The notes: generated from the letters alone by a model not told the origin. DNA of 64,000 bases from Gracilinanus agilis (GCF_016433145.1 NC_058134.1:298697376-298761375); one strand, 5' to 3'; shown: positions 148-53,850, numbered from the stretch's first letter. Made by a program: numbers and translations.

Positions 148-3100
148 TTATTTTCTAGGCACCTCTCTTGAGTTTTTCAAACTTGGTACACCTGAACAAA
201 GACAAAAAAAATCACTTATACTTATGTTTTGGATAGAGTAAAAAGTAAAGGGGAAAACAATTGTCCCCAGTCTAATTCAAGAGTTCCCAGATTCCCATTC
301 TTCTTTAAATTTTAACAGATTTTAACCCTCCCTTGACCTTTTGATCTTATCTCCTGGATAAGAATTACTGGACTCCATATTTTATCTACCATGCTTGATG
401 TTCAGCTTCCTTGGTTTATTTATCTTTAACTTCTTTTGCCTCCTGCCACAGGGCTCTGGAAAGAACCACTGTAAAATATATATACCTGAGGACTGTTTAC
501 TTGAAATAAATTGGAAAGATAAAGGTTGACCGTCTGGAGATTTCAAAATGGGTTCAATGAGAGCACTTGTGAACATATCGCCAAGTTTTAAACTTGAATC
601 TTTAACAGAAGACAGAACTAAAAGTTCTTAAGACAGATGCTCTCTAAGATCAAGCCCACCTTCTCCTGTATTCTGGATATATCGTTGGGAGAACGTACTG
701 GGAAAGGGGATTCTTTGGACAAAGCACTTTTTTTATTGAGTAAATACCTCCTTCTAAAAGCTTCTTAGTAGGTTTATAATCAATAGGGAAAGGCAAAGTT
801 TGAGACCCAGAATGTAACATTCCATAAAATCACCGCTAGTCCCTCAGAACAAGCTAGATCCATGAGGGGGAAGTAGTCATCACACTTGGGAGCCCCAATC
901 TGGCAATGCCTGTGAGAACTGGGAGCATGAGCTCAAAGTAAAATGTGAAGCATCTGAAATGGCTCATGAATCAAAAATTATGGAGGGACAATTTTGGAAG
1001 AATGGAAGAAAAGCAACTGAGTAGGAAGGGTCAAATACATGGAATATGACTTTGTCAAAGAACCAATGAGCACTGCTACACAACTTCATCATACAAAGTA
1101 TGAGAATCTTGGCAGAAGGAGGGGAGAAAGAGATCAACCAGCATGGCCCAGCTTTGGAGCTTGGTAGTTTTGGATAGAAAGCTGAAGGCCTGAACACAGA
1201 TAACTGGTTTAGGACAGGGTTCAGAACATGCTGGAGCCCAACCAGACCTGTGGAGTGGAGAGAAACTGAGGGATTGCAATTCGAAGTGAAAATACTTCTG
1301 ATTGTTTGGATGTTTTTCTCTACACAAAGGCTAATTGTGGACCTGTCCCCCCATTTCCCAAAGCCCTGCTCCCAGGGCTCAGGAGAACCATCACATGACA
1401 ATGCTTCAGTAGATTTCAAGTCATTTCAATTTGCCAAGCGCTTAGAAAGGAGCTGCTGTGTGTAAGGCTCCTGAACAGGTCCTGGATGACCCTACACTTC
1501 AAAGATGAAACAGGCAGATAGAAGGTGCCACCCAGTTCTCATCTCAGTTCACTATGAATCTGATTTATTCTTATATCTGTCATAATCCATGATGGGGCTG
1601 CCAGCCCTCAGTAGGGGAAGCTCTCTTTGTTTTTTTACCTTTGAGTCTTCAAAACTCCAGTTCTGTTTTCTTTGAATAGCAAATCACTGAACTTTAGTTT
1701 CACTTCCTTTACTTCCTCATATTGTTTTGTTTTTGTTTTTTTTCCATCATATTGTTTTAATCTTAATTACATTGTGGTATTGAACCATATGGATACATCA
1801 CAGGGTTTTTTTAACTACCCCTACTGGAAAGTGTGACTGTTAATCAATCAAAATTACATAAATTTTGTGTTGAAATCAGAGGAATACCAAAGAAGATTTG
1901 ATTTTTCACTCTTGATGCCATTGGGAATTAGAAAAGAAATATGGAGGTCTGAGAAATGAAGAAGCAGATAAAAGGAAACAAAAGATATGAATTCTGTGTC
2001 ACAGTGAATTTCTAAAAACTTTTTACTTTTATTTCATTCCAATAACAAATTTGCACATAAGTTTTCCAAAGTTACATGATTCATGTTGTCTCCCTCTCCT
2101 TTACCCTCCCTTCTCCTGGAGTTGACAAAGAATTCCATTGGATTATACATGTATTATCACTCAAAACATATTTCCCTACTAAGTGAATTTTTATAGAAAA
2201 TTATAGAACCATTATAGCAGGGGTCGGCAACATATGGTTCTTTCTGCAGGAGCCATAAAGTCAATTTTTTTTCAGGCGTTGTTACAGGAGTGGCACTGTG
2301 AGCACTGGACGGCTCTCCCGAAATTACATTTTAAAAAATGCGGCGTTTATGGCTCTCACGGCCAAAAAGGTTGCCGACCCCTGCGTTATAGGGTTATAGA
2401 ACTTTATCAATGAGAATATAAAACTAGGACATGCTCTTTTATAATTTCAGCATTGTTCAATCCGAAGATTCCAAATAGAGCAACTATATTTATTCTGCAT
2501 CTTCAGGCGATCCTATTGATGCAGATGCTAAAAATGTTGATTATATTCAGAGATCTACAAGGTTTAAGGAAAGAACCAGAAAAAAAAAGGTTATGACATA
2601 TTAAATAGTATCAGATCTTTAATATGTTGATGAAGTTATGGTATTGTGTCAGAACATGGCAGTGATATATAATAGATAATAATAATAGAGTTGTATAGCA
2701 TGGTGGTTGTAGGGTGATGGAAAGATGAAAAGAGTTTTGAAAAAATAAGGACGACAGGCTTTGTAACTGGATCACGCAGCAATTCCTTTGTAAGGCTGTT
2801 GGGCTCACCAAATAAGGGTCCCCCATCTATAATACCTATTACCTTGGAGAATTCCCTAAAGTTGCTTTCAGGCCAAGACCAGTTCTTTCCTAGCTATACT
2901 TGGAAAAAAATATGATAAAAAAAAACAAACTATGAAAAAACTTATGAAAAGAAGGCCAAATCTGTGACTGTGATTGGAGGAGCCATGTCTGCCATAGGTT
3001 CACCACCTGCATTACAGTGTGTTTTCTTTGAACCATGTTATGAATCTATTATTGTTTGCTCAGAAATTTTTACATATGTAGATTTTTGATATTTTGATTC

Positions 3101-6100
3101 TGATTTTGAATTTTTTCTTTTTCCCAAAGTTTAATTTATCTTCTGTTTTTCATTTTACGTTTTGGTTTTCCTTTGATAATTGACTCATACACTCCATAAC
3201 TCAACCATGTGTTCTGAGTTGATCAAGGTATTGGTCAACACCTTTCTCGGGGGGATTGTATAGATTTTCATAAAATCCACAATTTAAAATTTATCATAGT
3301 GTCTGGCCCATAGGAGGTATTTATTGATTTCTTGCTAAGCAAATCAATATTACAGTAGACAACTGAGATAAATTCTGACCAACCTAATGAGCGTCGGTCA
3401 CTTTCTCTGGAAGTTAGCACTTTCTCATGTTACCTTTACCCTGCACGGATTTTTCTCTCTTTCATTCATACATCAGTCTATTGTCCCAGGTGCTTTAAGA
3501 GCCAAACAGAGCAGTTGCTCTCATTCCAATGAAGGAGCAAAGGGAAGGCTGTATAAAGAAAATGCTGTGATGACATTCTCAGAGGTCAAACCTAGCAATC
3601 AGAATTGAGAAGTGAGGGAGAGTCACAGAGGATGAAGACCAAAAACTATTATGGAAACCAGGATGACCACATACCTAATTATTACAGCTATATAAATGGG
3701 AATGAGAAGCAAAAAAGTTAAAACAGAAGGAGGCAAAATAAGAATGACCAAAATGAACAGATATGACAAGGAACCTTCCCCTGTTTCTTTTCAGTGGTGA
3801 AGGACTCTGGGTGTGGAATTCTGGAAATAATATCAGACTTTTCCCAGAATGCTAGGTAGTTTTAATGATTTTTTTCCTTCCCTTCCCTTCTCTTTTATAT
3901 TCAGAGATAACTCTTTGAAAGCCTGTTGGGGAAGAATACATGGGGAAATGCAAGTGATTCAAAACTCCAGGATGTCAAATAAAATTCTTAAAAATTGCTT
4001 CTCGGTGTCTCCAAAAATAAGGTCAAGTGGGCTAAAGATACAGTAAGGTGAGGTTTGTGACAGTGTCATATCTTCCTTCACAGCTCAGGTGGAGTTCTAC
4101 TTGTTCAGAAGACCTGTAAGTATATCTAACAATTAAAATAAAATATAATAAAAAATAATGGCCTGCTCCTCCACGCTAGTGCCTTGCCATCCAATGTTAG
4201 ATTGGTCTGCTCTGTAATACTGATTAAACACACATACATCCATATAGAACACATCTGCGTATTTATTTCTTCTGTGATAGAAAATAAACCTGAGGGCAGG
4301 GATTGTTTCTCCTTGGTCTCTGTCCTGAGTAGTCAGTTCAGCACAAGTGCACGGCAGAGGCTTCAGAAGTCCTAGTTAATGATCACTGAAGTAGAGGACC
4401 GTTGCTTGGGGGAATTGGGTGAAAAGGTGAAACTATCCAACTGGTTTTTCTTCTGTTTTTCTTCTTGGTTCACTTCTTGGAAGCTTGATCTGTTGTCTCA
4501 GAGAGCTGAAATGAAAACAAAACAGGATTAAGAGAATGGAGGGCAAGATGTCGCTAGCTAGGGTCCTGGGTGAACCTCAGTGGGTGATCTGTGACAAAAC
4601 CATGGTGAATGGCAAAATGAAAAACAAGAGTAAGCCAGAGTGGAAGGGCGATTGACTAGCCGTGTCATCTAAATCAAGCCACTTCTCCTCTGTCTTCCTC
4701 GGTTTCCTCAACTGTGAGACGGGAATAAAAATGTCATGCATGTGCCTCCCAGGGTTGTTGCGAGGAACGAATGAGATATCATATTTAAAGTTTTATAAAC
4801 TTGAAGTATTAAATGGATGCTCGTTGTAAGCATCCTTATTGTAGGGATTATTTTTATGATTGCTACTGTTGTCATGAAAGGGTCAACACACACAAAATTC
4901 CAGACTCACAAAAAAATCTGAAGACACAAGAAGGCAATAATGTCGATCCAATGCAACGACCGAATACTGCGGGTACAAAAGGAAGAGAAGGCTGAGCGCT
5001 CAAAGTCAGCGAGTGGAGAATCGTAAATGTCAAGGCAGCAAGCAGTGATTTGGTGCCTCTGATGTGTCTGATATTGTATTAATTAATGGAGTGACCAGGG
5101 AAGGTGAAAAATAAACACAGCTCATAGGCTAATAGAAGGGCAGCCACGTACACGACAGAGTGCGCTCAAGATAGATACGGTATAAATTGGGGGCAGTCTG
5201 AGAAGGGAAGGCACTAGGAGCTGCCGGGTAAAGTTCTCTTCCAACTGAGGATGGATCTTGAGGGAATTCAGGAAAGAAGTAGGAGTGGGGCGCAGTCTTC
5301 TAGGGATGGAGGATGGAAGGAAGGGAAGGAGAGAAGAAGGAAAGGAGAAATAAAAGGAAAGGAAGAAGCAAGGGAGGGATAGAGGAAAGAGTATCGCTTC
5401 CTTAAATGTCAGCACTGTGCTAAGGACTCTATAAATAGTATTTGATTTACAAATATCCTCTCATAATCAAAGTGAATAGGTGAGGGGAGGCGGGTTATGA
5501 AGATATTCCAGTGATTTTGATCCTAGAAGCAATAGAGAATCCTGGAATTTATTTAATGGGGGAAGGGTCATGTTCAGAGCTTTAGAGAAATAACTTTGGA
5601 AGATCCTCAGTGGAGAATGGATTAAAGTATGAAGAGACAAGACAAGGGGACCAAATATAATAGGGGTTTATTAACCATCCTGTGTGTCATAGTGCCCCTT
5701 GGCAACTGGATGAAATCCTTCTCAGAAATGCATTGTGAGATGACCAAAACAATGTTTGAGTATTACCTGTGAATAGGAAACAGCCTCAGATCTAGAGAAG
5801 CTCCCTTACAAGGCTGTCTAGTCCAAGCCAGTAACTATGCACTTGATGAATGTGAGACCCTCAGAGCCAACCTGCTTACATTCGATCAGCAAACCAGGAG
5901 CTAAAGGCAAGTATTGTGACTCTAAACCCATCTCTCTTCCTCCTTGTCCAAGCTGATGTTATTTATCAAGGTAAAGAAACTCGGTAAATTAAAAAACATC
6001 AGAGAAAAGGAAATCAAGACTAGATTCAACACCATAAATACTATCTAGGATTTTGTTCTAGAGATCTACCTTGGGATTCTGTTTCCTCTTTCGAGATTTT

Positions 6101-9100
6101 GACTGGCCAGGACGGTTGGGGTCAACAGATGCCATGTAGTTTGGATCCTTTCCAAGAAACTGGAGGATAGAGCTTACGACCTGTTCAAATGTCATTTTGC
6201 GGATTTGAGCTTCACTCGGATGAACTGCACTGCCTCTACGGGCAATCTGGTCATTTGAGGGCTTTGGTCGACCTGCATGAGAAGAAATGAATTAATCAAA
6301 ATCAGCAAAGTATTGGGGACATTGAGTCAGGAACTGAAGATAGACCCCAATATCTAAAAAACTCTTTCCCCTCAAGGACCTTACACTCTTCCTGAGAAGT
6401 CTGTTGGGGAGGCACATCCTTTGTACGTGCAAAAAGGGATTGTAATTAAACATAATCATGGGGGGTGGGGTGTAGGGAGAAACGAATCTCTAGAAACTTG
6501 GATTGGGATAGGCTTCAAATAGAAGGTGTTGATTTAACTGAGTTTTTTTTTTAATTTTTTAAACCCTTAACTTCTGTGTATTGGCTCCTTGGTGGAAGAT
6601 TGGTAAGGGTGGGCCATGGGGGTCAAGTGACTTGCCCAGGATCACACAGCTGGGAAGTGTCTGAGGCCAGATTTGAACCCAGGACCTCCTGTCTCTAGAC
6701 CTGGTTCTCAATCCACTGAGCTACCCAGCTGCCCCCTTTAACTGAGTTTTGAAGGAACCCAGAACCTCTTTGGCCATGCTGGTGAGGAAAGAACATTTCA
6801 ACCAAGGAGCATCATATATAGTACAAAGGCAGAGAATATCAAACATGAAGAATGGCACACAAAAAAAAAAGTCCAAGTGTGGTCAAAGTGGAGTGTGGGA
6901 AAAGGAAATGTAAACTGTAATCAGATACCAACCAGAGTTCATCCAATGATGATTCAGGGGCAATAGAGAATCCATAGATATTTTGAGCAGGGAAGTGGTG
7001 TAGTCAGAGCCACGTATTAGATAATGGACACTGGCAGGGGTGTGGAAGATGGATTAGAAAACAGAGAGATTTAAAGAGAGGAGATCAAATCAGAGGATGT
7101 AGAAATAGTCTAATTGAAAGGTGATAAACCCCTTGATGTAGGATCAAGTCCTGTGATTTGAAGGAAGGGATATATCAGTCAATCTGTCACTAAGCATGCA
7201 TCTAATGCCTACATTAGGACAAGCAATGTGCTAAGTGCCAGGGAATCAAATGAAAACCAAAAAAAGAAGTCTCTATCTTTAAGGAAGTCATAACCTAAAA
7301 GTAGAGAAAAACAATAACGAACAAGCAAATTATAGAGAGGAGAAGTTAGAAAGAATTAAAAGACTAAAAGTACTTGAAATAAGAGGGATTGAAAAAGGCT
7401 TCCGGCAGAAAGTGAGGTTTTATCAAAACTGGAAGGAAGCAAAAGAAAGAAAGAATTCCCGGCATGGGGCAAGGACAGTGAAAATGTCCAGAGTTTAGGG
7501 ATGGAGTGAAAGGAATAGCAAGTGAAAAGAATACCACCGTATCTAGATCAAAGAGCAGAGAGAAGATCTAACATGACAGGAAAGACAGGAGTTGTTATGT
7601 TATGAAGTGCTTTGAACACCAGTCAGAGGATTTTGTGTTTGATCCTGAGTAATAGGAAGCCATGGGAAATTACTGTGTCATGGGGTGACATGATCAAATC
7701 AGTGCTTTAGGACATGTAATGAGGAAAGAATCAATAAGACTTTCCAATTGCTTGGATATATCCGATGAATGACGAACTGAATTGCCTCTGAGATTTAAGC
7801 ATGGGTGTCTGTAAGGATGATAGTTCCCTTAATAAAAATAGGAAAAGTTAGGAGGAAAAGAGGGTTTTGTAGGAAAGGTGGTAAAGTTTGGTTTGGATAT
7901 GAAGTTTGGAGAAGAAAAAAGGAGCAAGTACTTACTGATTCACTCTTAAATTCACATCAGTGGTCTCTGGATGTAGAACACAGAGGAAGGAACTGAATCC
8001 CATTCCAGAAGACATTTCTTTTTCCAAATTAAAAAGTAACCCTTTAAACTTTATTTGTGCACATTCCACCTTCAACCCTATAATCATTATCTGCCTTTAT
8101 GTCACTCTCTCCCTGCTAGCTTCAGGTCTTTAAGTGAAGATTCAAACACCCATCTTCTGCCTGATAGAAGCAGAAACTGCACCCCTACATTTCAGAGATG
8201 GTCAAGGGGCAGAGTTGGAGGTTTAGTGTATTATTACTCAGCCACCACTGAGGTCCTTGCCAACTCTGATCTTCTGTGATGATCTGACTTCAGGAATGTG
8301 GTTTAATTATATATTCTGTCATTTATTAAATCCATTCAAGAAATGAATGAAAAATCAGAAAAAGTTATTAAACCATGTGGGAATCCATTTGAACAGTCTC
8401 TAGGATTGTGCTTTAGAATTTTACCTTGTGATTGAACAGCATTTTCTGGAACTATTGGGTTACGCCTCTGAGTTTCCCTTGAGGAGCTGCTTCCTGGCAT
8501 ATTAAGTCTTGAAAATGATTTGTTCTTTTCTTGGCGCTGGAAATTGGAATAGGTAGCATGCTTCAAACTCCCTTGGGAACTACCTGGGTTATTGGTGGTC
8601 ATGATTGCTTACTTGGGTAGCTCCTGTTTTGTTTTGTTTTTTTCCTCTAGGAGTAATGCACCAATTTATTGAGTTAGCTCTCCTGAATTGGAAAGAAAAA
8701 TTTTAAATCAGTATTTCCTACTCAATTCTTTCGCTTATGGCTATATTTTGCATTGAGGCATTTGAATTATCAAAAGGAAAAAGAAACTACATCCCACCTC
8801 ACCAGTATGAGTGGCTGGAAGTCTTCTTTCCTTCTTTAGATTGTCTCTAACACCATCTAACTTTACCAACATCATTTCCCCCTCTGGATTAAAGTTGTAG
8901 ATCCTCCAAAAGTAGCTCACTCTCTGATTTTTAGCTTCCAGGGGACAGAATCCTCAGATTCTGGGGTTTTTTTTAACTTCTTTGCTCTCTTGTAAAGAGC
9001 CCTGCATGTAACAGGTACATCATTTATACCAGTGATGGCGAACCAATGGCACCAGTGTAGAAGATGGCACACAGAGCACTCTCTGTGGCCATTCAGCCAC

Positions 9101-12100
9101 CTTCCCTCCCCCAAAGTTTGTTACCTAGAAAGGGATTCAGGTGGAGCTGCTCTGAGCTGACCTGGAGCAGAGCACTCGGACCTCTCTCCTCCCCCCTCAC
9201 TACACTCACTGAGGACATTCCTCACTTCACCTGCCCTCCGCCCAGCAGTCCAATGGGAGTGCTTTCTCCCTCCGGGTAAGGGGGGGAAGAGGAGGGCATA
9301 CCCAGCATGTGGTTGGGGGAGAGACATGGCACATGATCTGGGGAGGGGGGGGCCAGTCCTCCATCTCTAAAAGGTTTGCCATCACTATACCATGAGTTGT
9401 CTTGTTAAACTAAATCAAATTGGATGATCAAGGGAGAGAGCTTTGAAGATTTAACAAGGACTTAAAGGTTTTGAGCACTTAACCAATTCAGTTCTAGGAA
9501 ATATGACAAAATAGCTATAATTGATATAAGTTAAATTATTATAAATTATATAATATATAAATAAATTATATAGATTATATGAATATATAAATAAAAGAAT
9601 GAATGAGTAAATTAATGAAAATGGAACATGAACATAATGAAGTAGCAGTAATGATTATGATAGCTAGCATGTATCATGTGTCTATTATGGAGCAGTCACG
9701 TAAAACATTTTACAGTTATTATTTCATTTGACCCTCACAACAACCCTGAACCTCATAATTGCTATTATTATACAGATAAAGAAACCGAGGAAACTAGAGT
9801 TTAAGTGACTTGCCCAAGGTCATGCAGCTAATGTCTGAGATTGGATTTTTAACTCAGTTTTTTTCTGACTCCAGGCCCAAGATTCTATCCACTACAGGAC
9901 CTTACTGCTTCCTTATGGTCCAGTTTTCATCCTCACTCAGTCACCTTGCCCAGGATTTCAACACTGCCCCATCGTCTTCTCTCTCAACAGACATCTTAAA
10001 CTACTAATTTTCGGAGAAAATAAAGGCCATCTATCAGAAGTTCTGTTATCTCTCCTATCCCTTTGAAACTTCCTCCTCTCTTTCCTCTTTTCCTATAGTC
10101 TCTGAGGAAGAGTAGTTCCATCTTCTATCCCAGGGAAATTGTTCCATTTTTTTGTCTTCTATTGTCACCACTTCTTTTCTGGGCATCTTTACAGCCTCAT
10201 GATCTAACTAATTAACTCTCTGTCCTCCACCTTAAGTTGGGCCTATTCTGGTAAACCACAGAGAAACAAAATGGCTTTAGATAAGTCCCTGGCATTTTCC
10301 TAGAAGAAATTTGGGTCCATGAACATGGACAGCTGAGGTATGTAAACTGAGGAGCCAAGTTGTCTCTTTTGCATCCATTGGTCATCTCTCCGTTTCCATA
10401 GTTCAGATTCTGTCAAAGAGAAGATTATTATACTGCCTTCCCTTCCCATGGCTCACCTCGGTCAGGATACCTATTCCTTGTCTTCTTTAGGGTAAGAGTG
10501 ATCATTATGCTTTTAGGAGGAGGTAGAGTTGGCATTTTTATGGTTTTTAATTATTTTTAATATGACTAAGGTGACATTTGGACCAGGTGGTTAGAACACT
10601 TAGCCTGGAGTCAGGAAGAACTGAGATAAATCTGAAGGCATTTACCAGATGTGGAACCTAGGCAGTTCATTTAACCTTTTTTGGCTTCAGTTTCCTCATC
10701 TAGAAAACGGGAATCATAATAGCACCTACTTTGTAGGATTGTTATGAAGATGAAACACAATATTTGTAAAGCACTTGAAAGAGTGCCTGGCATGTAGTTC
10801 TCTGTGTACCATTGCTTATCTCTTCCATCCCTCCTCATAACATCTTTATGAATATGGACAAAAAAGGCCTTATTTCCCCATTGGACAAAGAAGAAAACTG
10901 GTCCAGTGAGTAGAAGTTTCTCCAAGGTCTCACAACTAGAAATATTAAAATCCATATTTTTTGAGTCCACCTCTTTACAACAAAAACTATCTTGGATTCT
11001 TCCTCAGGAACAGCTACCGTATTAGGTGTTGTCACTTTGGGCTTTCCAGAATGACAAATGGTGGCTCCAGTCAAATGGGTCCCAACTCTATCCTACATAG
11101 ATATCCCAGGATCCATTGGATCAATGAAGCACTTACCAGCAAAGAAGAATCTTTTTTTCTGAAGAGCTTCTCAAGGTGATCCCTAGAATATCGTGGGGTA
11201 GAGAGAAAAGGCAGTTTCTTGGACGTGAATGCACCAATGATTCCAGTGATTCTGAATGTAATAGATGCTTGAGATCCATTTATATAGAGGTGAGGGTGGG
11301 GCAGGGTGGTGGAGCAGGAATTCTGGGATTTCTTCTTTTACCTGAGTAGTTTACACTTCAGGGAAGTGCTTCTCACTTATCACTAAGGAGAATGGTAGAA
11401 TGTGTGAACTTAGTTTCATTGTAGTAGCCACCAAGAAAATGCAGCTCTCTCCTCATCCTTTTTAACATAATTTATTTGATTTACTAACTCTTTATAAGTA
11501 TATATGATTTCTCTATAACTAATCTACTCCACTGATGGACAAGATTGTTCCTTCATTTCAGGCACTGTGGCCATAAAATTACCCTTATATACATCCTCCT
11601 TGTATTTCTTCTTTAAGAGGGATCTGAGGAAAGAACTAGAAAAGGATTTTGGATGGCATTGGTCTTGGATTCAGCAATCTCTGGTTTTGAATCCTACCTC
11701 AGTCACTGACTAATTGTTTCTCTCTGAATAAGCCACTTAATGGTTCCCTTCCTCAGTTTCTTTCCTCTATAAAAATCTGCCACCTTCCTATTCCAAGCCT
11801 GTGATGCTGGGATTCCAAAGTCTACTACAAGAGAGGAGGGAGAGCAGGGCAGGTACCAAGTGCCAAGTGCCAAGTGCCTCAGCCCTCCATGTTCAGACCA
11901 TCCTAGATCCTCGGCCCAGGGCTTAGGTCTGCCTCCTTGGTCTATTATGTTCACTATCTGCTTGTTGAAATTAAGCAGGGCCATTAAGGCACTGAATATG
12001 AAATTGCTGAATGTTCCTCTAATTTTCAAGGATCTTGCAAAAGATAGTAACCCTGAGCTTTTGAGGACACTAATTTGATTCTTGGTGAAAACTTAAACTT

Positions 12101-15100
12101 AAGGCGGAAAATCTGGTAAAGGATTTAAGTAGAGTGAGGAAAATAAATCTCTTCCAGGAATGGAAATGTCTTCAAGGGGCTGGAGGGGTGTTGTCAGGAA
12201 AGTAATGGGAACACATGCCATCAGGATGAACAAATTTGGCAAGACTCAGAGCCAGTCAGCTCCCTGATTACTATTAGTTGCTTTGGGATCCTGAATCAGA
12301 AAACCTTTCTATGCCTCCTTGAACATCTGCAGTGACTAAAGGGAAAAAATCATAGGATGACTTGAGATTCTGAGGTTTTGTTTGTTTTATTGCTAATATT
12401 GTAATTTTTTAAAAATGTTATTCTTGTGGCAAATTTACACATAAATTTTCTAAGGTAACACGATTCTTGTTGTCTCCCTCCTCTCTTCCCTCCCCCCTCC
12501 TGGAGTTGACAACCAGTTTCACTGGGTTATACATGTATTAATTATACTCAAAACCTGTTTCCAATGATTCATTTTTATAAGAGAGTAATCTTATAAGACC
12601 AAAACCCCAAATCATATACCCAAATAAACAAGTGATAAATCAAGTTTTCTTCTGCATTTTTGCTCCAACAGTTTTTGCTCTAGATGTGGAGATCCAACCT
12701 GTGTCCCAAGTCCCTCTGAATTGTCCTAGATCATTGTATTGCTATTCGTAGCAAAGTATTACATTTGATCATCCCACAATGTTTCGATTACTGTGTATAA
12801 TGTTCTCTTGGTTCTGCTTATTTCATCAGTCTACATCTGTCTGGTTCTTAAAGAAATCATCTGGTTCGTCATTCCTTACAGAACAATAATATTCCATCAC
12901 CATCATATACCACAATTTGTTGAGACATTCCCCAATCAAGGGACACCTCCTCAGTTTCCAATTTTTTGCCACCACAAAAAAGTGCAGCTATGCCTTGAGA
13001 TTATGGGAAGAGACATGGAGTGGTTGAAGGGGTTCCTCATCCTCCTGGACATCGACACACTTAAGAGAGGCCCAGGGAGAGCTTGAGCATAAGATCAGGA
13101 AGGGAAGGATCTCTCCACTGGGAAGGGAAGATTGATAGCTCTCCAGGCTGTCCCACTATCCCACTCCAGGAACCAAGTAGAGAGGTCTAAACTCCTTAGA
13201 CTGATGAGGGATCAGACCAAAGAGAAGGTGGAAAGTGAATGAGGAGGGTCTGGCCTAACTCTGCAGAATATCTCTGTGAAGCCTCTCTCATGACTACAGA
13301 AGAAAAAGAGCTCTGCCTTGAGGCCCTTGAGGCTATGCTGACTATTTCTTCTCCAGGTCCCCATTATCCTTGGGCTTGCCAAGTGGTATCTGTGGTCAGG
13401 AACAACAAAGAAGGAAGTGAATTTGTCAGTGCTTGAGTCCCCGCCTAGACTGTCAACATCTAAGACCAGGCTGGTCTCACAAACCACAGTTGCTCTCTAC
13501 AGGCATTTGGGCCAAAATGCATCTGGATTTCTGGTGTTTGGGGATCTTGGAGCACTATGTGCTAGCTAGAGAGAGTAAGACAGATATGGGCACTCAGATG
13601 ATTTGTTGGCAGACAATTTGCTGTGTCTCTGAGTTGGAAGTCCTTCCTGCAGTCGGAGGAGACCCTGCTTCTGTCACCCTCAGTGCCATCCTAAGCCTCT
13701 CCCAGGGAACTGGACTGAGATATCATTATGATGAACCATGAGATTCATGTTTAATCTGGAGAAGAGAAGGCTCAGGGATTAGGGGAGAGCATGAGTCTGA
13801 ATCTGAAGTCTCTGAAGGGCTGTTAAGTTGAGGAGTAATAAGTCTTTTTCTACTTGGAGATAGAGGGAAGAACTGGGCACAGTGAAAGCAGGTGAGATTG
13901 GGGAAATTTTTTAAAGGGGTAGATTTAGATTTGATGTCAAAAAAGACTTTCTGAGAATGAGAGTTAACAAAAAGTGCCTGGGTTGCCTGAAGAGGTAGTA
14001 GGATTCCCCTCCAAGCAGATTGTATGGCACACCTTTGCTACTGTATTTTAGTTGGATTATTTTTTTTATGGATTGATTGGGTCATTGAAGTCCCTTCCAA
14101 CTATTTATTTCTTAGGTTCACTGGGTCTTGGAATATTCTTGAATGACCTGAGTTTTACTCAGTCAAAAAAGCACTGACCTCTATAAAAGAGAATTCTTTG
14201 TTCTCTTTGAGTTTACACTTGTGAAAGGGAATCCTTTATTCTCTTTTCCTAGTAGGAGCTAACACTTTGGTTAACAACTTAAGTACCCCTACTTAGTACC
14301 TCCTTAGATTGTGAAGACAGGATTAGCTCTCCTTTGAGTACCTTTTGATTGAATCAACAAAAACTTGAACTAAGTGGAGGAGCTGGAAAACCACTTAGAG
14401 AATTCACACCCTCCGAAACTCAAAAATCTCTGTATGCAGGGTCATATAGCTGGGAAGTGTCCGAGGCCAGATTTGAACCTAGGACCTCCTGTCTCTAGGC
14501 CTACCTCTGATTGTGAGATGCATTTCTGAACTTGGAAGTCAGGTTTGCACCAATGGCTGGGGGAGAAGGGATGGCCTTCCCAGGTATTGAATCCCTCTCA
14601 GGAGTGTGGCGGCTGGGGTGGCCCAGCCTTTAGGCCAAGAGGCCTGCCCTCCCAGGGGATGCTGGCCTCTGCACCAGCTCTCAACTCCCTACACCCCGGG
14701 CCCACCAGCACCAGGGAAGAGACAGAACTCAGCGTGCCTTTCCTCTGCCTTCCAAGCCTGGAGCCAAAGAAGCCTCTGGCAGCAACCATGCTCTCCCTGC
14801 CGATGTACACAGCGTAACTTCTTCCACAGAGCCCACACGGATCGCCCAGGTCTGACACGAGTCTCGCTTCCCTGGTCTCAGCTCCCCTCATGGTCAGAAC
14901 TGAGAGGAGGTTTCAGTCCCTTTACTGGACTGAGGAGGAGACCAAAACCCAGGGCGCTGGAATGCCTCGGCCACTCTCCCCAAGAGGGTGGGATGTGGAA
15001 GATAAATCAGGCTTACACCCTTGCTGTTAGGGCCACTCCTGACTAGCCTATAAGCTGGCCTCCACTTTTGTATCTCTGCCAAGCCCCTGGCCCAGCCTTA

Positions 15101-18014
15101 GGATGCCTGTGTTTGTATGGCCCTGTGTCTATCCGTACATCCATCCATCCAATCCATCTATTTATCCATCTAGTCACCTCTCTATCTATCTGTACATCAA
15201 TCAATCTATCCAGTCATCGCTCTATCCTTCCATCTATTTATCTATCTATCCATCCATTCATTTATCCATCTATTTTTCTATCCATCTATCTATCCATTTA
15301 TTCATCTGTCCATCCATCCATACTCCTTTCTTCCTGACTTCACCCTCTCCTTCACCTCTCTCTCTTCTCCTTGCTCCTCCCTGTCTCGGGCTTTTCTCCA
15401 ATTTCATTCAGACCCTTCAGTACTTTCCTTGTTTCCTCCTTTCTCCTACGTGCCCCTAGGAGGGTCCACCCCTCTTTGATTTACAGTATCCCCGAGATCC
15501 TGGGATTTCGTCCCCTCCTCCCCCTGGCTCACAGCTGGGAATGGCTAAACAAGGTCTGGACTGGAAGGGAAATGGATGAGGGGCATCTGCAGCCTCCTCT
15601 AGGCCAGCAGAGGCTCCCACATCCTTGCCATGTTTTGTGGCCAGAGTTGCTCATAATAGTTGTGAATGTGCCTGCATTAGGCCAATGAGCCATCCTCTTC
15701 CCAGAGTTGAGGGTTGCTTTGGTTCCTAGGTATCCCGTGGCTTCTGGCCCTGCCATAGAATAACTATGTCTTCTAGAGTTGTGGGTGACTTGGGTCAGGG
15801 CCAAGTGGACGTTACACCAATGGAGTAACATCCTGGGCTCACTGAGACCACCTTGAGCACACCAGGGCTGAGGGACTGGCAAAGTCTGTAGACTGACTTC
15901 TTGAGGTAGACAGGCAGCAAGGAGGGAAGGGTGTGTTGGATGGAGAAGATGACCATGGCCAGGAAGGCCATGAGAGGTATTTGTATTTCTGCTGGTGACT
16001 TTCATTCTGCTCCAAAGGCAAATTGGCCTCCCTCCTAGCCTAGAGAGAAAGTTGGGCCTTGTCACTCATCGGGTGGTCAGGGCCAAGGAAGGGCTGCTTT
16101 TCAAAATGAAAGCAAGGCTTCCCTGAAAAAACCTATAGGAGAGCAGCTCTCTGAATGGGCAGAGAGGACCTTTCCCTGGATCAGGATGGCACAAGGTGTA
16201 AGAAGCCCCCCTGGAAGGGAGAAGAGCCTCTATCCATCATGGGAAGCTAGGAAGTGCTCTGAGGGGCTTCCCAAGAGGGAGGAACACATTCACAGGAACC
16301 TGAGATGATGAAGGAGGATGAAGAACGAGTGAGCTATGGTCGTTGGTGACTCTCTGCTAAGAGCTAGAGAGGCGGCTGGATATCTACTTCCTGGCAAACA
16401 TCACAGAGACTCAGCTGCCTCCTCTTCATCTTCACCCAAGAAGAGAATGAGAGGAAATTCGATTCTGTGTCTGATTTCACCAAGAAAAAGGAACTGTTTT
16501 AGGGGTAGAAATGGTGGGAACCTTGCAACAAAGCAACCTCTCCATTTTCAGAGGGTTTTAAGAATGGGAAAGATCAATATGAAGATCCTGACAGTCTGGG
16601 CCCCCCAAAACTTGGAGAAAACATTTCAGTGGGATCAAAGGAAAGATAGGCAGGCTTCCTTTCCAGAGATATTAGCCCTGGAAAGATGGTAAACTCTCAA
16701 GAAGTAAACTCTTGAGGCAAGTAGTTGGCTCAGTGTATAGAGTCATACCTGAAGACAGGAGGTTCTGGGTTCAAATGTGGCCTTGGACACTTCCCAGCTG
16801 TGTGATCCTGGGCAAATCACTTAACCCCAATTGCCTAGCCCTTACTGCTCTTCTGCCTTGGAACAAATACTTAGTTTCAACCCAGTAACTTAGGGTTTAT
16901 AAAAAATGTAAAAGAAAATAATTAAAATCTCAAGACACAACAATAAGGAAGAAGAGAGTGTGTTGTCTAAAGAGGCTGATGGGGATGCACAGGGAGCTCT
17001 CTGACCAACGTAGATGTCCAAAAGAGAGATGGAAGCCAGAGCAGGGGGGGTGAGGAAGAATTCAGGGTCTGTCAGAAAGTCAAGAATGCTCCAGGACACA
17101 CAGCGAGCCAGAACAAAAGGGGATGGTTGTATTCAGTTCTCTTTGGGAGCAGAAGGACAAAAAACAGACATTTATGTCGATTTATAATTGCCCTGCAGGC
17201 ACGTATTTTACAAATAATAATCCTCACAATAACCCTGGGAGATAGGTGCTCTCATGATCTTCATTTTACAGTTGAAGAAATTAAAGCAAACTCACTCAAG
17301 GTCTCACAGCTAGGAAATGTCTGAGCTTGGTTTGAAACTCAGGTCCTCCTGACTCCAGGCCCAGTGCTCTGGGCACTATGGTGCCACCTCACAGCTGATG
17401 CTAATAGGCTACTTAGGTTTTAAGCAGTGTGATGGAGCCAGGAAGCCCTGGATTCAAATCCCACCCTGACATCCTGATAATAACTTTGTGACCCTGGGCA
17501 GGTCCTTTACCCTCAGTCTCTAAGACTTCTCTACTGAGTTTTGAAGGAAATCTCACTTCATTCCCATGTCTATCCAGGTTTGTCTTTAAAACTCACAATT
17601 GCCTTGGGAAATGGCCCCTATAGGGATTTCTAACTAAGATTCGCCAAGGAGGAAATAGATGCTAAGAAAGGAAAGTCATTTGCCCAAGGTCACCCAGAGA
17701 GCCTCAGGCAGCAGCTGAACCTGGGGTCCTGGACTCAGCTCTGGGAACTGTTTTAGGAAGGGTGTGGATGACGAGGAGGGGGTCCAGGGGAAGGCAGCAA
17801 AGATGGTGAGGGACTCACAGAAGGAGAGATAGATGTTCTGTGGCTCTTCCTGCCATCCCCTCCACTCCACTTTCAGCTCCTTTATAAGAAAACACTTACA
17901 GACGCATTCTTGTATGACGGGTTATCCTCAAAGCACTCATGGCAGAATTTGTAAAGAAAGAGGACGTCCACAGGACACCAGGACTGGCGTTCGCCGTCTT
18001 GTTGGGCTCCGAAG
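148..18014 (-). CDS. Putative unrecognised multi-exon gene (basic, largely disordered protein); exon chain tentative
   Basis: Exon-like segments with AG/GT ends and open frames: 17900-18014, 11137-11182, 10231-10409, 8425-8682 (one frame break), 6070-6272, 5179- or 5129-5299, 1248-1319, 486-599, 148-191 (stop TAA overlapping AATAAA at 147-152). Best supported: 6070-6272 (67 open codons, 7 CpG), 17900-18014 (strong acceptor, GTAAGT donor, 7 CpG) and 11137-11182 (GTAAGT donor). No homolog recognised. Confidence 0.42.
2218..2383. mobile_element. Young non-autonomous hAT (Charlie-like) DNA transposon / MITE
   Basis: Perfect 14-bp TIRs CAGGGGTCGGCAAC (2218-2231; 2370-2383), 8-bp TSD CATTATAG/CGTTATAG, 8 CpGs in 166 bp. 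Confidence 0.9.
6547..6736 (-). mobile_element. Opossum-type SINE (SINE1_Mdo-like)
   Basis: Reverse complement starts GGGGCAGCTGGGTAGCTCAGTGGATTGAG; 14-bp TSD TTTAACTGAGTTTT at 6533-6546 and 6737-6750. Confidence 0.88.
6760..7930 (-). mobile_element. Old L2 fragments
   Basis: Purine-rich decayed sequence with L2-like phrases (GGATTTTGTGTTTGATCCTGAG, GTGCTAAGTGCCAGGG). Boundaries approximate. Confidence 0.5.
9030..9387. mobile_element. hAT-type MITE, second family (TIR CAGTGATGGCGAACC), inverted relative to the other two copies
   Basis: Ends CAGTGATGGCGAACC ... GGTTTGCCATCACTA; subterminal GGCACACAGAGCACTCTCTGTGG shared with the 27.1 kb and 59.3 kb copies. Confidence 0.75.
9675..9897 (-). 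mobile_element. MIR/MAR1-type CORE-SINE
   Basis: GAAACCGAGG...AAGTGACTTGCCCAAGGTCA core. Confidence 0.7.
10585..10800 (+). mobile_element. MIR/MAR1-type CORE-SINE
   Basis: GCCTGGAGTCAGGAAGAACTGAG...CAGTTTCCTCATCT. Confidence 0.7.
12410..12995 (-). mobile_element. LINE-1 3' fragment (antisense)
   Basis: Resembles the reverse complement of the L1 3' end in this window and the fragments at about 2020-2200 and 20225-20515. Confidence 0.7.
13745..14105 (+). mobile_element. CR1/L3 3' fragment
   Basis: CTGGAGAAGAGAAGGCT...AGATTTAGATTTGATGTCAAAAAAGACTTTCT, typical CR1 3' end. Confidence 0.7.
14182..14432 (+). mobile_element. Partial LTR of the same family as 61661-62503
   Basis: Shared TTTACACTTGTGAAA..GGAAT.CTTTATTCTC...TACCCCTACTTAGTACCTC.TTAGATT sequence; truncated by a SINE fragment at about 14437. 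Confidence 0.7.
15140..15325. repeat. (ATCC/ATCT)n tetranucleotide microsatellite
   Basis: Degenerate CCAT/CTAT runs. Confidence 0.85.
16330..16670 (+). mobile_element. CR1/L3 ORF1 (SGNH esterase-like) remnant
   Basis: Translation VVGDSLLRARE..YLLPG resembles the CR1 ORF1 VVVGDSLLRG...CLPG motif. Confidence 0.55.
16714..16908 (+). mobile_element. Marsupial SINE
   Basis: A/B-box-like head (GGCTCAGTGTATAG; GGTTCAAAT), core and A-rich end. Confidence 0.8.
17170..17390 (-). mobile_element. MIR/MAR1-type CORE-SINE
   Basis: TCCTCACAATAACCCTGGGAGATAGG...TCCTGACTCCAGGCCC. Confidence 0.7.
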
Positions 18015-20224
18015 CTACCGAAAGAGAGGGGAGGATAGGGACACCCTGCCCTTCTCCCATCAACCTCTGGATAGGGAAAGGCTGGGGCAGGGTCTCCTCT
18101 CATCAATGGCACACTTGACTTTTGCCATGAACAGAGAAATGACCATACTCTGGTGATTTAGGGCCTTCCTTCAGACGGAAAGATTTGGCATTCTAGTAGG
18201 CAGGGATAGAGGCTGGTGGCTCAGCTCCCAACAATAGCTGGGCTAAATGAAGGGCCATCTGAAGGAGATGGTTTGGGATGGGGCCCTTCTTGGCCATTGC
18301 AGGAGAAAGCTGGAAGCCTGCCGCCATGTCTGCCCAGAGCACTTAGGATACGGGGGTTTTTAGAAGGGTCTTAGGACAGCCCCACCTCTATCCTGTCTCC
18401 AAATGATCCTTGAAATTCCCTCCTGGTCACTGTCTCTGACCCGAAATTTGGGGTTCATGGCCTGTGGCTCACTAGCCCACTAACCCTAACCCAACTCTCC
18501 CACAAGCTGAACCTGGAAATACTCTTTCCTGAAGCCCCTGCAGCTCCTCCTAACCCCGCATCCCACAGTACTCACAGCCACACAACCCAGCGCCCCCCGC
18601 AAACTCCTCTAAGTCCCAGCCTCTATAACCTCCCGTTGGGCTTGGTCTGGTGCTCCCTGGGCTCTGGGGCCTTGGGTTTTGGAGGCTCCAATGGGAGGAA
18701 ACCTCCAGCTTTTACTTGCCCTCCTGGGGAGGTCCTGGTGAAAGAGGAGTCTTGTTCCTGGTTCTGGGAGGGGGTCAGGAGGCTCTGGCTCAACCTCAAG
18801 GGTGAGGTCTGACTCAGTGCTGCTCTGTCATCAGGGCTGCAGCTCAAGACCACTCCCCCCATTTGCAGCTTTGACCTATAAGAAGGAGCAATAAGGAAGG
18901 ACCCCTGTGCCATGGGAAGGTGCCAAGAGTCCAGCCCTGGTGAAGAATAGCCCTGTTCTAGGCTAGGGAACAGGCAGTGGCCAAACCATAGGGAACCCAG
19001 AAGCTGTGTAGAGCCTTGCTACAATGGTACTTTGCTGGTGGGCCCTTTTCCTTCAGGCAATCAGGGAAGGCTACATGGTGACAAATGGGAATGTGATATG
19101 AGGATGAGAAATGAGGGTTTCACCCTGATGGCCTCTAAGAGTCCTTCTACTTTACAACAATTCCCTTCTCTGAACTCCCACCAACGCCACCCCTGAATTA
19201 AGGGGCTCAGACAAGCCCCATTCTGTCTGGTCTCTGGAAGGAGATAAACCAAAAGCCATCACTCCTGGGGCCCACCCTGGGACAATACCAGCTTGCTCCC
19301 AAGTCAATGGAGAAACCTTGCAGACTGGACAATGGGTGTGGGGTGCAGAAAGCAATGGTGGACATTGCTGGTCCCCTGAGGGACCTCATGGTCCTAGTTC
19401 AGGGGCATCAGGGTGCCCTAGAGCAGGTTTCTTTTCCTCTCTAGCCCCAGTGTCTCTCCGAGGCTAAAGAGGGTGACCAAGATCTTTTAGAACAATGATG
19501 AGGATCTGGAGTCTAGGAACAGGCTGTTGGTTCTGTCTGATGCTGCCCAAGCACAGTCCCCAAGATATGTAGAAGCCCAGAATGGGTTCCAGGAGTGGAG
19601 GTGCCTGACCACTGACTGGAGGGAGGCCCGACCCAGAGCAGATGCCAAGAGTGGAGATGCCAGACCACCAACTGGCAGGGAGCCCAGCACAAAGCAGAAG
19701 CAGCTCCTGTTTCCAACATACCCTCCCTGGCAGGAGTCTACAACTACAACTGTTCACTCATGCAGGAAGGCATAGTCTCGATCAAGACCAGAGGCTGCCT
19801 GACCTCTTCTTCCCCTGGTGGGGCAGAGCTGGGTGCAGAGTAAGGCAAGATGAGGTGTCTGGCAATATGACCCTGAGTCAGCCTGCTGCTCACTTGTCTT
19901 GGGGGTGGCCTGAAATCTGAGCAGGTAAGCAACTTTGATTCAAGGCCTGGTGGCCCCTTTTGCTTTTGACGATGACTTAGAGGAAGCTCTGGATTCTTGA
20001 AGGTCCTGCTGAACTTGACCAGTCAGTAGCTTCCCTTTTAGCCTGTGGACCAGACTTCAGGTGTTGTGAGGCCATCCTAGAAACTTTTTCATCCAGTAAG
20101 ATGCTTTGTTTTAAAAAGCTTGCTGAGCCCAGAGCCAACTAATATATGGGGATCCCCCCAGAAATGAAGAAAGTTGTGTGGCCAGGGTCATTAGGATAGA
20201 CATCTCCAGGGGACACTAATTTTC

Positions 20225-20889: not shown

Positions 20890-21086
20890 TTTTTTAAACC
20901 CTTACCTTCCACCTTGGAGTCAATACTGTGTATTGTTTCCAAGGCAGAAGAATGGTAAGGGCTAGAGGCAATGGGGGTCAAGTGACTTGCCCAGAGTCAC
21001 ACAGCTAGGAAGTGTCTGAGGTCACATTTGAACCCAGGACTTCCCATCTCTAGGCCTGGCTCTCAATCCACTAAGCTACCCAGCCA
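20890..21086 (-). mobile_element. Marsupial SINE
   Basis: TTTTTAAACCCTTACCTTC...GGCTCTCAATCCACTAAGCTACC. Confidence 0.8.
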
Positions 21087-28565: not shown

Positions 28566-29300
28566 AGACTCCCTGGTGCTCGTGCGCCCAAGTGTCTTCC
28601 GTGTCTACTCCTGTGCGTACTCCTGCGTCCTACTCCCCCACCCATGCGTGCGTCTTCTTTCCCCTCCCGACCCCGTACGTCCCGTACGTGCCCGTGTACC
28701 ATTCCTCCCCCTTCCCATACGTTCTCCTACGACCCTGTAGGACCCCATGGGTCCTTCCATTCTGGCCGGGATTACCCCTCCCCCATGCGCCTTCCCACAT
28801 TCTAGCTCCATGAACTGCCCTTCCCCCACAATACGCATGTGCACTCAGCCACAGGGTCCTTCGGGCGGTGCGACGGGCAGCCCAAGGGGCCTCCTGGCCA
28901 TCCATCTGGCGTTTGGGGCGGGCAGCCCCTGCCGTTGCATAGCAGCGGTGACGACGCTGCCAAGCCCGAGGCCTGAACGACATGGCCGGGGAGCCCGCTG
29001 GGGCTGGGGCTGGGGCAGGGACCGGAGCTGGGGCCGGGGCCGGGGCAGGCACGGGGCCGGAACTGGACCAGGAGAAGTATGACTCGGCCGAGAACGTCAA
29101 GATCATCTGCCTCGGGGACAGCGCCGTGGGCAAGTCCAAGTGCGTGGCGGGGGAGAGGCGGGGGCCTTGAACACCAAGTCCCAGAGTTTGGGGTGGGTGG
29201 AGCTCTGAACGCCAACCCCTGGGGCCTGGAACACTGATCCCGGGAGGGGGAGGGGAGGGAGTCCTGAACGCGGTTGTGGGGCAGTCACTGAATGCCAAGC
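28370..29300. promoter_or_regulatory. CpG island / bidirectional promoter shared by NME6 and RABL2
   Basis: GC- and CpG-rich stretch in an otherwise CpG-poor window; the two divergent ATGs (28565 minus, 28982 plus) are 416 bp apart. Confidence 0.85.
28934..28946 (+). promoter_or_regulatory. Candidate RFX X-box upstream of RABL2
   Basis: GTTGCATAGCAGC, one mismatch from GTTGCATAGCAAC, ending 35 nt before the RABL2 ATG. Confidence 0.45.

Positions 29301-40744: not shown

Positions 40745-53850
<13,106 letters not shown>

What the first reader, a model, noticed from the sequence alone, without database searches (positions are those of the whole stretch)
148..18014. Hidden multi-exon gene on the minus strand, not shown by the ORF track
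Seen: exon-like segments with polypyrimidine-AG acceptors and GT donors whose phases chain into one frame. 17900-18014 holds GCCATGA with a good Kozak context (MSALRITRHTRMRL), then 11137-11182 (DHLEKLFRKKDSSLL), 10231-10409 (NLNYGNGEM...NRPNL), 8425-8682, 6070-6272 (GRPKPSNDQIARRGSAVHPSEAQIRKMTFEQVVSSILQFLGKDPNY...SKSRKRKQNPK) and 5299 downward (KTAPHSYFFPEFPQDPSS...). Two of these segments each keep 7 CpGs in a CpG-depleted background. Inference: a basic, disordered protein with an NLS-like SRKRK and one amphipathic helix, possibly marsupial-specific. I recognise no family, and some exons may be chance hits.
Basis: partly seen in the sequence, partly recalled or inferred. Interest (0 to 1): 0.72.

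Follow-up and report, generated by a model that had tools for sequence, protein, structure and literature searches.

The report
Unannotated marsupial orphan gene, three exons

Summary
The six segments do not chain into one frame. Segment 8425-8682 has stops in all three frames. Exon-like segments of this quality are no commoner here than in shuffled sequence (92 against 90 +/- 22).

Two of the six segments are real coding exons. The 6070-6272 peptide has one relative among 1.84 billion representative proteins: 'uncharacterized protein LOC116419675' of Sarcophilus harrisii (E 7.7e-14, 58% identity). Antechinus flavipes has LOC127539010.

The devil protein's first 58 residues align to 8602-8423. 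So 8425-8682 is real and carries the start codon at 8602, with in-frame stops upstream.

Revised model: 8602-8425, 6272-6070, 4505-4470, about 138 codons, with GT-AG at every intron and AATAAA at 4267-4262. Segments 17900-18014, 11137-11182, 10231-10409 and 5299-5132 match nothing in the dasyurid proteins.

The protein is basic and mostly disordered, with one conserved helical core of about 34 residues and no known family. No RNA evidence could be obtained. The locus lies upstream of RABL2, beside ACR.

The parts
8425..8682 (-). Bases 8682-8603 are untranslated in the opossum. The CDS starts at ATG 8602-8600 and runs to 8425 (59 codons plus 1 base, MTTNNPGSS..AVQSQ).
   Evidence: A local tblastn aligned devil residues 1-58 to 8602-8423 (43% identity, E 2e-8). 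Global alignment gives 25/57 identical with in-frame gaps only. The exon is the same length as the devil's internal 86-residue unit. The acceptor is TTTTTCTTTCCAATTCAG|G and the donor is AAG|GTAAAA. In-frame stops lie upstream of the ATG.
6070..6272 (-). Its first 2 bases complete a split Gly codon, followed by 67 codons (RPKPS..QNPK). It holds the conserved core MTFEQVVSSILQFLGKDPNYMASVDP.
   Evidence: It gave the only hit among 1.84 billion representative proteins (P0001, E 7.7e-14). tblastn gives E 1.6e-20. Identity is 39/67 to both dasyurids, and 26-28/34 in the core. The acceptor PWM score is 11.6. It has 7 CpGs, o/e 0.60. AF2 predicts helices at residues 20-24, 28-40 and 43-49.
4470..4505 (-). 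Coding part of terminal exon C: 11 codons (LSETTDQASKK) plus the TGA stop at 4472-4470.
   Evidence: It ranks first of 376 AG sites downstream of exon B for phase-0 anchored similarity to the devil C-terminus LQETMTQVPKK (score 26, next best 11). Its acceptor TTTTGTTTTCATTTCAG scores 7.9. Phase 0 fits the end of exon B.
4240..4469 (-). Probable 3' UTR, with AATAAA at 4267-4262.
   Evidence: This is read from the sequence and is the first canonical signal downstream of the stop. It is inferred, not shown by RNA.
17900..18014 (-). It is not supported as coding and holds a small CpG cluster of unknown meaning.
   Evidence: It has no counterpart in the dasyurid proteins. It cannot be in frame with the conserved ORF. 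It has 7 CpGs at o/e 0.93, but the surrounding 500-base windows have o/e 0.17-0.27.
11137..11182 (-). Unsupported.
   Evidence: The acceptor is weak (2.6) and there are no CpGs or homologous sequences.
10231..10409 (-). Unsupported as coding; a 5' UTR role was not tested.
   Evidence: Pfam finds nothing and the dasyurid proteins have no counterpart. Segments like it are as common as chance predicts.
5132..5299 (-). It is not the homologous terminal exon and lies in the intron between exons B and C, inside a stretch that has kept its CpGs.
   Evidence: Matches to the dasyurid proteins are at chance level only (E 4-7). The homologous C-terminal exon is at 4505. It has 6 CpGs at o/e 0.62.
4640..4830 (-). 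MIR-type SINE inside the intron between exons B and C.
   Evidence: I recognised it by eye against the MIR core (..ACAACCCTGGGAGG....CACAGTTGAGGAAACCGAGG....ACACGGCTAGTCAA). The consensus is recalled from memory and no repeat library was run.
8803..9028 (-). Speculative first non-coding exon: TATAAA at 9028-9023 and a strong donor CTG|GTGAGG with its last exon base at 8803.
   Evidence: This rests on a sequence scan only. Nothing supports it beyond the motifs.

Best explanation
The stretch holds an intact opossum orthologue of a marsupial-restricted orphan gene. That gene is so far known only as automatic predictions in two dasyurids: LOC116419675 in Tasmanian devil and LOC127539010 in yellow-footed antechinus. 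No opossum protein of this family is in the protein collections I searched.

The coding sequence has three exons on the minus strand:
- 6272-6070
- 4505-4470

By arithmetic this gives about 138 codons. All introns are GT-AG, the exon A/B junction splits a Gly codon, and AATAAA lies about 200 nt after the stop.

The product is a very basic protein (pI about 11 for each of the two main exons), rich in Ser, Asn, Gln and Pro. It is mostly disordered around one conserved helical core of about 34 residues.

Inferred mechanism, not shown: the conserved helical core is a protein-binding module and the basic disordered arms contact nucleic acid or other partners. It is most likely made in a restricted tissue such as testis, as many small, basic, fast-evolving orphan proteins are.

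At most they could be untranslated or alternative exons.
For: Homology:
- The exon B peptide has a single significant relative among 1.84 billion representative proteins: P0001, E 7.7e-14. It is named XP_031796905.1, LOC116419675 of S. harrisii.
- The antechinus relatives are P0003 and P0004.

Exon mapping onto the window:
- Devil residues 1-58 align to 8602-8423 (E 2e-8) and residues 58-126 to 6273-6067 (E 1.6e-20).
- The C-terminal residues map to the exon starting at 4505, which ranks 1 of 376 AG sites.
- The protein unit boundaries (..QSQ|G.. and ..NRK|LQE..) coincide with GT-AG splice sites of matching phase in the window.
- Opossum exon A is 258 nt, the same as the devil's internal unit of 86 codons.

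Evidence of constraint:
- The roughly 137 codons show no stop and no frameshift against the dasyurids, only in-frame gaps of 1-2 codons. The chance of 137 open codons on this strand is about 1e-3.
- The 80 nt of exon A upstream of the ATG is coding in the repeated dasyurid units. In the opossum it carries two stops and a shifted frame.
- Conservation is uneven in the way constraint predicts: core 76-82% identical, flanks 24-44%.
- AF2 gives helices at pLDDT 84-90 over the core.

Antisense coding is excluded, since all three plus-strand frames over exons A and B have stops.
Against: - There is no transcript evidence. The one run search listed no RNA holder.
- The dasyurid proteins are automatic predictions whose support I could not inspect.
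So synteny, DNA-level conservation and dN/dS are untested.
- The exon C match is short (11 codons; tblastn E 0.65 on its own). The C-terminus differs in all three species.
- The function is inference only. The SRKRK cluster is not conserved.
- No diprotodont or other opossum protein of this family is in the databases.
Confidence: 0.72

Rival explanations
1. The locus is transcribed, or once was, but is not protein-coding. It would be a lncRNA or a decaying gene whose ORF is still open by chance, and the dasyurid 'proteins' would be pipeline ORF calls on such an RNA.
For: The only relatives are 'uncharacterized' automatic predictions. Isoforms and C-termini vary between species. No family, fold or paper was found. 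No RNA holder was found.
Against: The same frame is open over about 137 codons in the opossum and in two dasyurids, with in-frame gaps only. The adjacent untranslated part of the same exon has acquired stops and frame shifts. The core is 76-82% identical against 24-44% in the flanks. The ATG, all splice sites and their phases are kept.
Confidence: 0.17
2. One reading: one six-exon coding gene starting at the ATG near 17940 and ending in the exon at 5299.
For: AG/GT boundaries exist at all stated coordinates, and segments 1-2-3 chain in phase. There is a CpG cluster at 17903-18019.
Against: The frame entering 8425-8682 from segment 3 stops after about 30 codons. The conserved frame has two stops before ATG 8602. 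Segments 1-3 and 6 have no counterpart in the dasyurid proteins. The homologous last exon is at 4505. Such segments are as frequent as in shuffled sequence.
Confidence: 0.02
3. A variant compatible with the best explanation: one or more of the reader's exons 1-3, or another upstream exon such as about 8995-8803 behind the TATAAA at 9028, serve as untranslated leader exons spliced to the acceptor at 8683.
For: Exon A keeps a strong acceptor (8.9) at the position that the repeated dasyurid units use as an internal acceptor. Candidate donors exist at 8803, 10457 and 11137.
Against: There is no RNA evidence. The acceptor could be a relic. Chance gives as many candidate segments.
Confidence: 0.3

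Closest known systems
Sarcophilus harrisii LOC116419675 (XP_031796905.1 isoform X2, 150 aa; XP_031796903.1 isoform X1, 236 aa), 'uncharacterized protein'
   Same: The exon plan is the same: an N-terminal Q/S/P-rich unit ending ..QSQ|G, then the exon with the core M-T-[FY]-EQVVSSILQFLG-x-DP-x-Y-x-ASVDP, then a short tail exon starting L-x-E-T. Identity is 44% in the N-terminal unit and 58% in the core exon. The start Met is at the equivalent position (AIM..).
   Different: The devil has two tandem copies of the N-terminal exon unit, and isoform X1 reads the second copy from its acceptor. The opossum window holds one copy, whose 5' part is out of frame with stops. The devil tail is 25 residues and the opossum tail 11.
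Antechinus flavipes LOC127539010 (XP_051818888.1, 226 aa; XP_051818887.1, 309 aa, named 'AP2-associated protein kinase 1-like')
   Same: The core exon is the same (39/67 identical to the opossum), as is the repeated N-terminal unit.
   Different: It has two or three copies of the 83-residue unit. The protein ends at the end of the core exon. The kinase-like name has no support: no Pfam kinase domain is found.
Small basic lineage-restricted reproductive or nuclear proteins, for example transition proteins and other testis orphan genes (comparison from general knowledge, not tested)
   Same: It is short, very basic, low in complexity, fast-evolving, varies in exon copy number between species, and lies beside a sperm gene (ACR).
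   Different: There is no sequence relation, and expression site and localisation are unknown. This is an analogy for the likely mode of action, not a claim of membership.

Membership tests
Dasyurid LOC116419675 / LOC127539010 protein family | Conserved core exon with MT[FY]EQVVSSILQFLGxDPxYxASVDP | tested here: met
   phmmer gives E 7.7e-14 and tblastn E 1.6e-20. There are 37 invariant columns in the 3-way alignment. The core is 26-28/34 identical.
Dasyurid LOC116419675 / LOC127539010 protein family | N-terminal Q/S/P-rich unit starting at the ..AIM.. Met and ending ..QSQ, with a split Gly codon at the junction to the core exon | tested here: met
   The alignment to 8602-8423 has E 2e-8 and 25/57 identity. 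The split codon G+GT gives Gly. The exon length of 258 nt equals the devil unit.
Dasyurid LOC116419675 / LOC127539010 protein family | Tail exon in phase 0 beginning L-x-E-T..KK | tested here: met
   The start at 4505 ranks 1 of 376 AG sites. The match is short and, of the dasyurid models, only the devil's have this tail exon.
Dasyurid LOC116419675 / LOC127539010 protein family | Same genomic neighbourhood (orthology by synteny) | not testable with these tools
Dasyurid LOC116419675 / LOC127539010 protein family | Transcribed and spliced as modelled | tested here: inconclusive
   No RNA run is listed for 5200-11199, but the two exons make up only about 8% of that stretch.
AP2-associated kinase (AAK1)-like, the source's name for antechinus isoform X1 | Protein kinase domain | tested here: not met
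   A Pfam scan of P0004, P0002 and the opossum exons finds no kinase domain and no match at or above any gathering score.
Any Pfam family or solved structure | Significant profile or fold match | tested here: not met
   Pfam gives nothing at or above its cut-offs. The PDB profile search gives 0 hits at E<=1. Foldseek against PDB gives 0 hits. Atlas scores are 0.86-0.88, below its lead level.

The most novel reading that the evidence does not exclude
This would be a protein-coding gene found only in marsupials, kept since before the split of American and Australian marsupials, carrying a new ~34-residue helical module with no relative elsewhere. Its N-terminal exon has been tandemly amplified one to three times in dasyurids but stays single in the opossum, where the gene has gone unannotated as a protein. 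If it is germline-expressed beside ACR, it would be a tractable case of an old orphan gene evolving by exon amplification.
Probability: 0.45. Interest if true: 0.5.

Novelty: new member of a known kind. Interest (0 to 1): 0.42.

Why it matters
It adds a gene to the opossum catalogue that protein databases lack. It extends an 'uncharacterized' dasyurid prediction to a second marsupial order, which turns two pipeline calls into a conserved family with a defined core motif. It gives exact junctions (8425/6272 and 6070/4505) that can be checked directly in RNA data.

It is also a caution for this scan. Reading splice motifs and open frames by eye found two true exons. It also found four segments with no support, at a rate that chance explains.

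Tried and rejected
Searches that found nothing or were blocked:
- Rfam on the whole window and tRNA scans found nothing.
- A word search with exon B alone was blank. That is expected, because only proteins of 37-117 aa were candidates.
- The Atlas searches gave sub-threshold hits only.
- The PDB sequence profile and Foldseek gave nothing.
- No paper mentions either LOC id.
- Earlier scan notes hold nothing at this place.
- The within-window repeat comparison shows that none of the claimed exons overlaps a repeat copy found there.

RNA evidence:
- My single run search used a 6-kb stretch, which dilutes small exons, and listed only one DNA-like holder.

- Two exceptions need disclosing.

Each exon was handled by reference, and the 138-codon length is arithmetic.

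Ideas considered and rejected:
- A CpG-island promoter at 18 kb is rejected: o/e is 0.17-0.27.
- Antisense coding over the exons is rejected: stops occur in all plus-strand frames.
- Devil C-terminus homology to the MIR-borne stretch 4708-4664 is rejected: E 2.4 and the wrong order.

Full report
**Context**

The window carries two recognisable genes.
- Acrosin (ACR) runs on the minus strand. One exon holds IVGG..TAAHC (53383-53772). The last exon holds GDSGGP..SWGAGC followed by a proline-rich tail (40748-41419).
- RABL2 runs on the plus strand. Its first coding exon (..KIICLGDSAVGKSK, about 28980-29150) lies in the only CpG island of the window (28.5-29.5 kb). A WDTAGQERF exon lies at 32483-32728.

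From general knowledge, the two genes lie tail to tail as in human 22q13.33. The finding (148-18014) therefore lies upstream of the RABL2 promoter; the corresponding side of human RABL2B is the chromosome end. I did not verify the species independently.

**Check of the observation**

All six segments have AG before and GT after them on the minus strand, and the quoted peptides are correct. With a simple position-weight score built from approximate consensus frequencies I recalled from memory, acceptors score 2.6 to 11.6 and donors 4.8 to 10.5.

The phases do not chain into one frame.
- Segments 1, 2 and 3 chain with each other.
- Segment 3 leaves two spare bases. It would therefore read 8425-8682 in a frame that stops after about 30 codons.
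- The frame of 8425-8682 that joins correctly to 6070-6272 has two stops before an internal ATG.

The other strand has 66, and Markov-shuffled sequence has 90 +/- 22. At stricter scores the count is 23 against 13 +/- 5.5. The chain is therefore what chance gives.

The CpG remark is correct for 17900-18014 (7 CpGs, o/e 0.93) and for 6070-6272 (7 CpGs, o/e 0.60). There is no CpG island at 18 kb.

**What is really there**

- Pfam, the Atlas and a word search with the 67-residue peptide of 6070-6272 were blank.
- The exhaustive search of 1.84 billion representative proteins gave exactly one hit: P0001, E 7.7e-14, 59% identity by phmmer over query residues 2-67 (39/67, 58%, by direct count).
- P0001 is XP_031796905.1, 'uncharacterized protein LOC116419675 isoform X2' of Sarcophilus harrisii (150 aa). 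Isoform X1 is 236 aa.
- A word search with P0001 added LOC127539010 of Antechinus flavipes, with isoforms of 226 and 309 aa.
- A third search for longer relatives (170-540 aa) found nothing more.
- No opossum, diprotodont, monotreme or eutherian protein appeared.

**Mapping the dasyurid proteins onto the window (local tblastn)**

- Devil residues 58-126 align to 6273-6067 (E 1.6e-20).
- Devil residues 1-58 align to 8602-8423 (E 2e-8).

The fourth holds the start codon: ATG at 8602 (context GCAATCATGA), at the same place as the devil's start (AIM..).

The junction leaves one base, which combines with the first two bases of exon B to give GGT (Gly). This matches ..QSQ|G.. in the dasyurids.

The devil tail LQETMTQVPKK.. 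matches LSETTDQASKK followed by TGA. That sequence begins exactly at an acceptor (TTTTGTTTTCATTTCAG|) at 4505, in the phase left by exon B. Among all 376 AG sites downstream of exon B, this site ranks first for anchored similarity (score 26, next best 11). AATAAA follows at 4267-4262.

The revised model is 8602-8425 + 6272-6070 + 4505-4470, about 138 codons.

**The other four segments**

Segments 17900-18014, 11137-11182, 10231-10409 and 5299-5132 have no counterpart in any dasyurid isoform beyond chance-level matches. Because of the in-frame stops, the first three cannot be coding in frame with the conserved ORF. They might be untranslated leader exons. Exon A does keep a strong acceptor, so some upstream exon is plausible. 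A TATAAA at 9028-9023 and a strong donor at 8803 offer a nearer candidate. None of this is tested.

**Evidence that the ORF is under constraint**

I had no dasyurid DNA, so dN/dS could not be computed. Four indirect arguments remain.
- About 137 codons are open in the homologous frame. The stop frequency on this strand is 0.049 per codon, so the chance of this is about 1e-3.
- Against both dasyurids, exon B aligns without any gap, and the exon A coding part aligns with in-frame gaps of one or two codons only.
- The 80 nt of exon A upstream of the ATG is coding in the internally repeated dasyurid units (EANLTNWYINPRKKQKQ..HPHPEAIM). In the opossum it is readable only in another frame and carries two stops in the coding frame. 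The same exon thus shows decay where it is not translated and none where it is.
- Conservation is patchy in the way function predicts. Residues 18-51 of exon B are 76-82% identical, the N-terminal flank 24-35% and the C-terminal flank 44%.

No plus-strand frame is open over either exon, so antisense coding does not explain the conservation.

**The protein**

- Exon A's coding part has pI 10.95 and is 59% S/T/N/Q/P/G. Exon B has pI 11.03.
- AlphaFold2 was run on exon B with a three-sequence alignment. Mean pLDDT is 67.8, with helices at residues 20-24, 28-40 and 43-49 and pLDDT 84-90 over residues 21-40.
- Foldseek against PDB, a PDB sequence profile search and Pfam give nothing.
- The source name 'AP2-associated protein kinase 1-like' for antechinus isoform X1 is unfounded, since no kinase domain is present.
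- The opossum's KSRKRK cluster reads KSSKGT in the dasyurids, so it is not a conserved signal. The devil has a KKRTK in its tail instead.

**Family evolution**

Antechinus has three (X1) or two (X2) copies of an 83-residue N-terminal unit. The devil has two copies or one (the internal unit is 86 residues). The opossum window holds one. The unit is a symmetric exon: 258 nt in the opossum and in the devil's internal copy. Tandem exon duplication therefore keeps the frame. The tail differs in all three species (11 residues, 25 residues, or none).

**Likely mode of action (inference)**

I take it to be a small, basic, mostly disordered protein. Its one constrained element, a short helical module, would bind a partner, and its arms would make low-specificity contacts. 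Several features fit the pattern of lineage-restricted germline genes: fast evolution, exon amplification, lack of relatives and a position next to ACR. Tissue and localisation are unknown.

**Limits**

- No RNA evidence was obtained. My one run search used 6 kb, of which the two exons make about 8%, and it listed only a DNA-like holder.
- Those places were kept out of external searches afterwards and masked in scripts from then on. Two exceptions: the local BLAST used an unmasked database made earlier, and the ORF listing printed an ORF overlapping them.
- The splice-site matrices are approximate and recalled from memory.

**Verdict**

The gene is real with probability about 0.7, but it is smaller than proposed and has a different start and end. 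It is a new member (the opossum orthologue) of an already predicted but unstudied marsupial protein family.

Noticed in passing
window 40748-41419 and 53383-53772, minus strand: These are acrosin (ACR) exons. The last exon holds GDSGGP..SWGAGC and a long proline-rich tail. An upstream exon holds RIVGG..CGGSL..LTAAHC. Pfam Trypsin matches the last exon (E 5e-5).
   Followed up: partly
window 28500-29500 and 32483-32728, plus strand: RABL2: the first coding exon (..ELDQEKYDSAENVKIICLGDSAVGKSK) lies in the only CpG island of the window (o/e 0.72, 36 CpGs per 500 bases). A WDTAGQERFQSMHASYYHKAHACIM exon is also present. RABL2 lies tail to tail with ACR.
   Followed up: partly
window 4552-5291: CpGs are unusually well kept (28 in about 740 bases; o/e 0.48-0.59 per 500 bases) in what the revised model treats as intron. 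Several of them lie inside an old MIR-type SINE (about 4640-4830). This could be a germline-unmethylated regulatory patch, an alternative exon or biased gene conversion. It remains unexplained.
   Followed up: no
window 17903-18019: Eight CpGs lie within 117 bases, in a region with no CpG island around it. No ORF family, tRNA or Rfam match was found. It could be a small promoter or a conserved non-coding element.
   Followed up: partly
window 2225-2384 and 14610-14968: Two further small CpG clusters: 9 CpGs in 160 bases and 11 in 360 bases. The first adjoins a repeat copy (2046-2175, similar to 12430-12562).
   Followed up: no
window 6574-6735, 16726-16871, 20926-21084, 14437-14508, 50579-50718, 49484-49631, 50010-50138: Copies of one SINE-like repeat family of about 150 bp (72-91% identical, both orientations). 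One copy sits in the intron between exons A and B.
   Followed up: no
window 44000-50000: An AT-rich stretch (GC 0.28-0.42) with strong A-over-T skew (0.27-0.37) on the plus strand. It looks like a LINE in plus orientation inside an ACR intron. It is related to 12447-12992 (67% identity over 551 bases, opposite strand).
   Followed up: no
window 15138-15321 and 19589-19698: A (CATC)n-type microsatellite array of about 180 bases, and a 56-base unit repeated twice (80% match).
   Followed up: no
window 52626: A single N in the sequence. Left as it is.
   Followed up: no
P0004 (Antechinus XP_051818887.1): The source name 'AP2-associated protein kinase 1-like' looks like a low-complexity misnaming. 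The protein is three repeats of the orphan N-terminal unit plus the core exon, with no kinase domain.
   Followed up: yes
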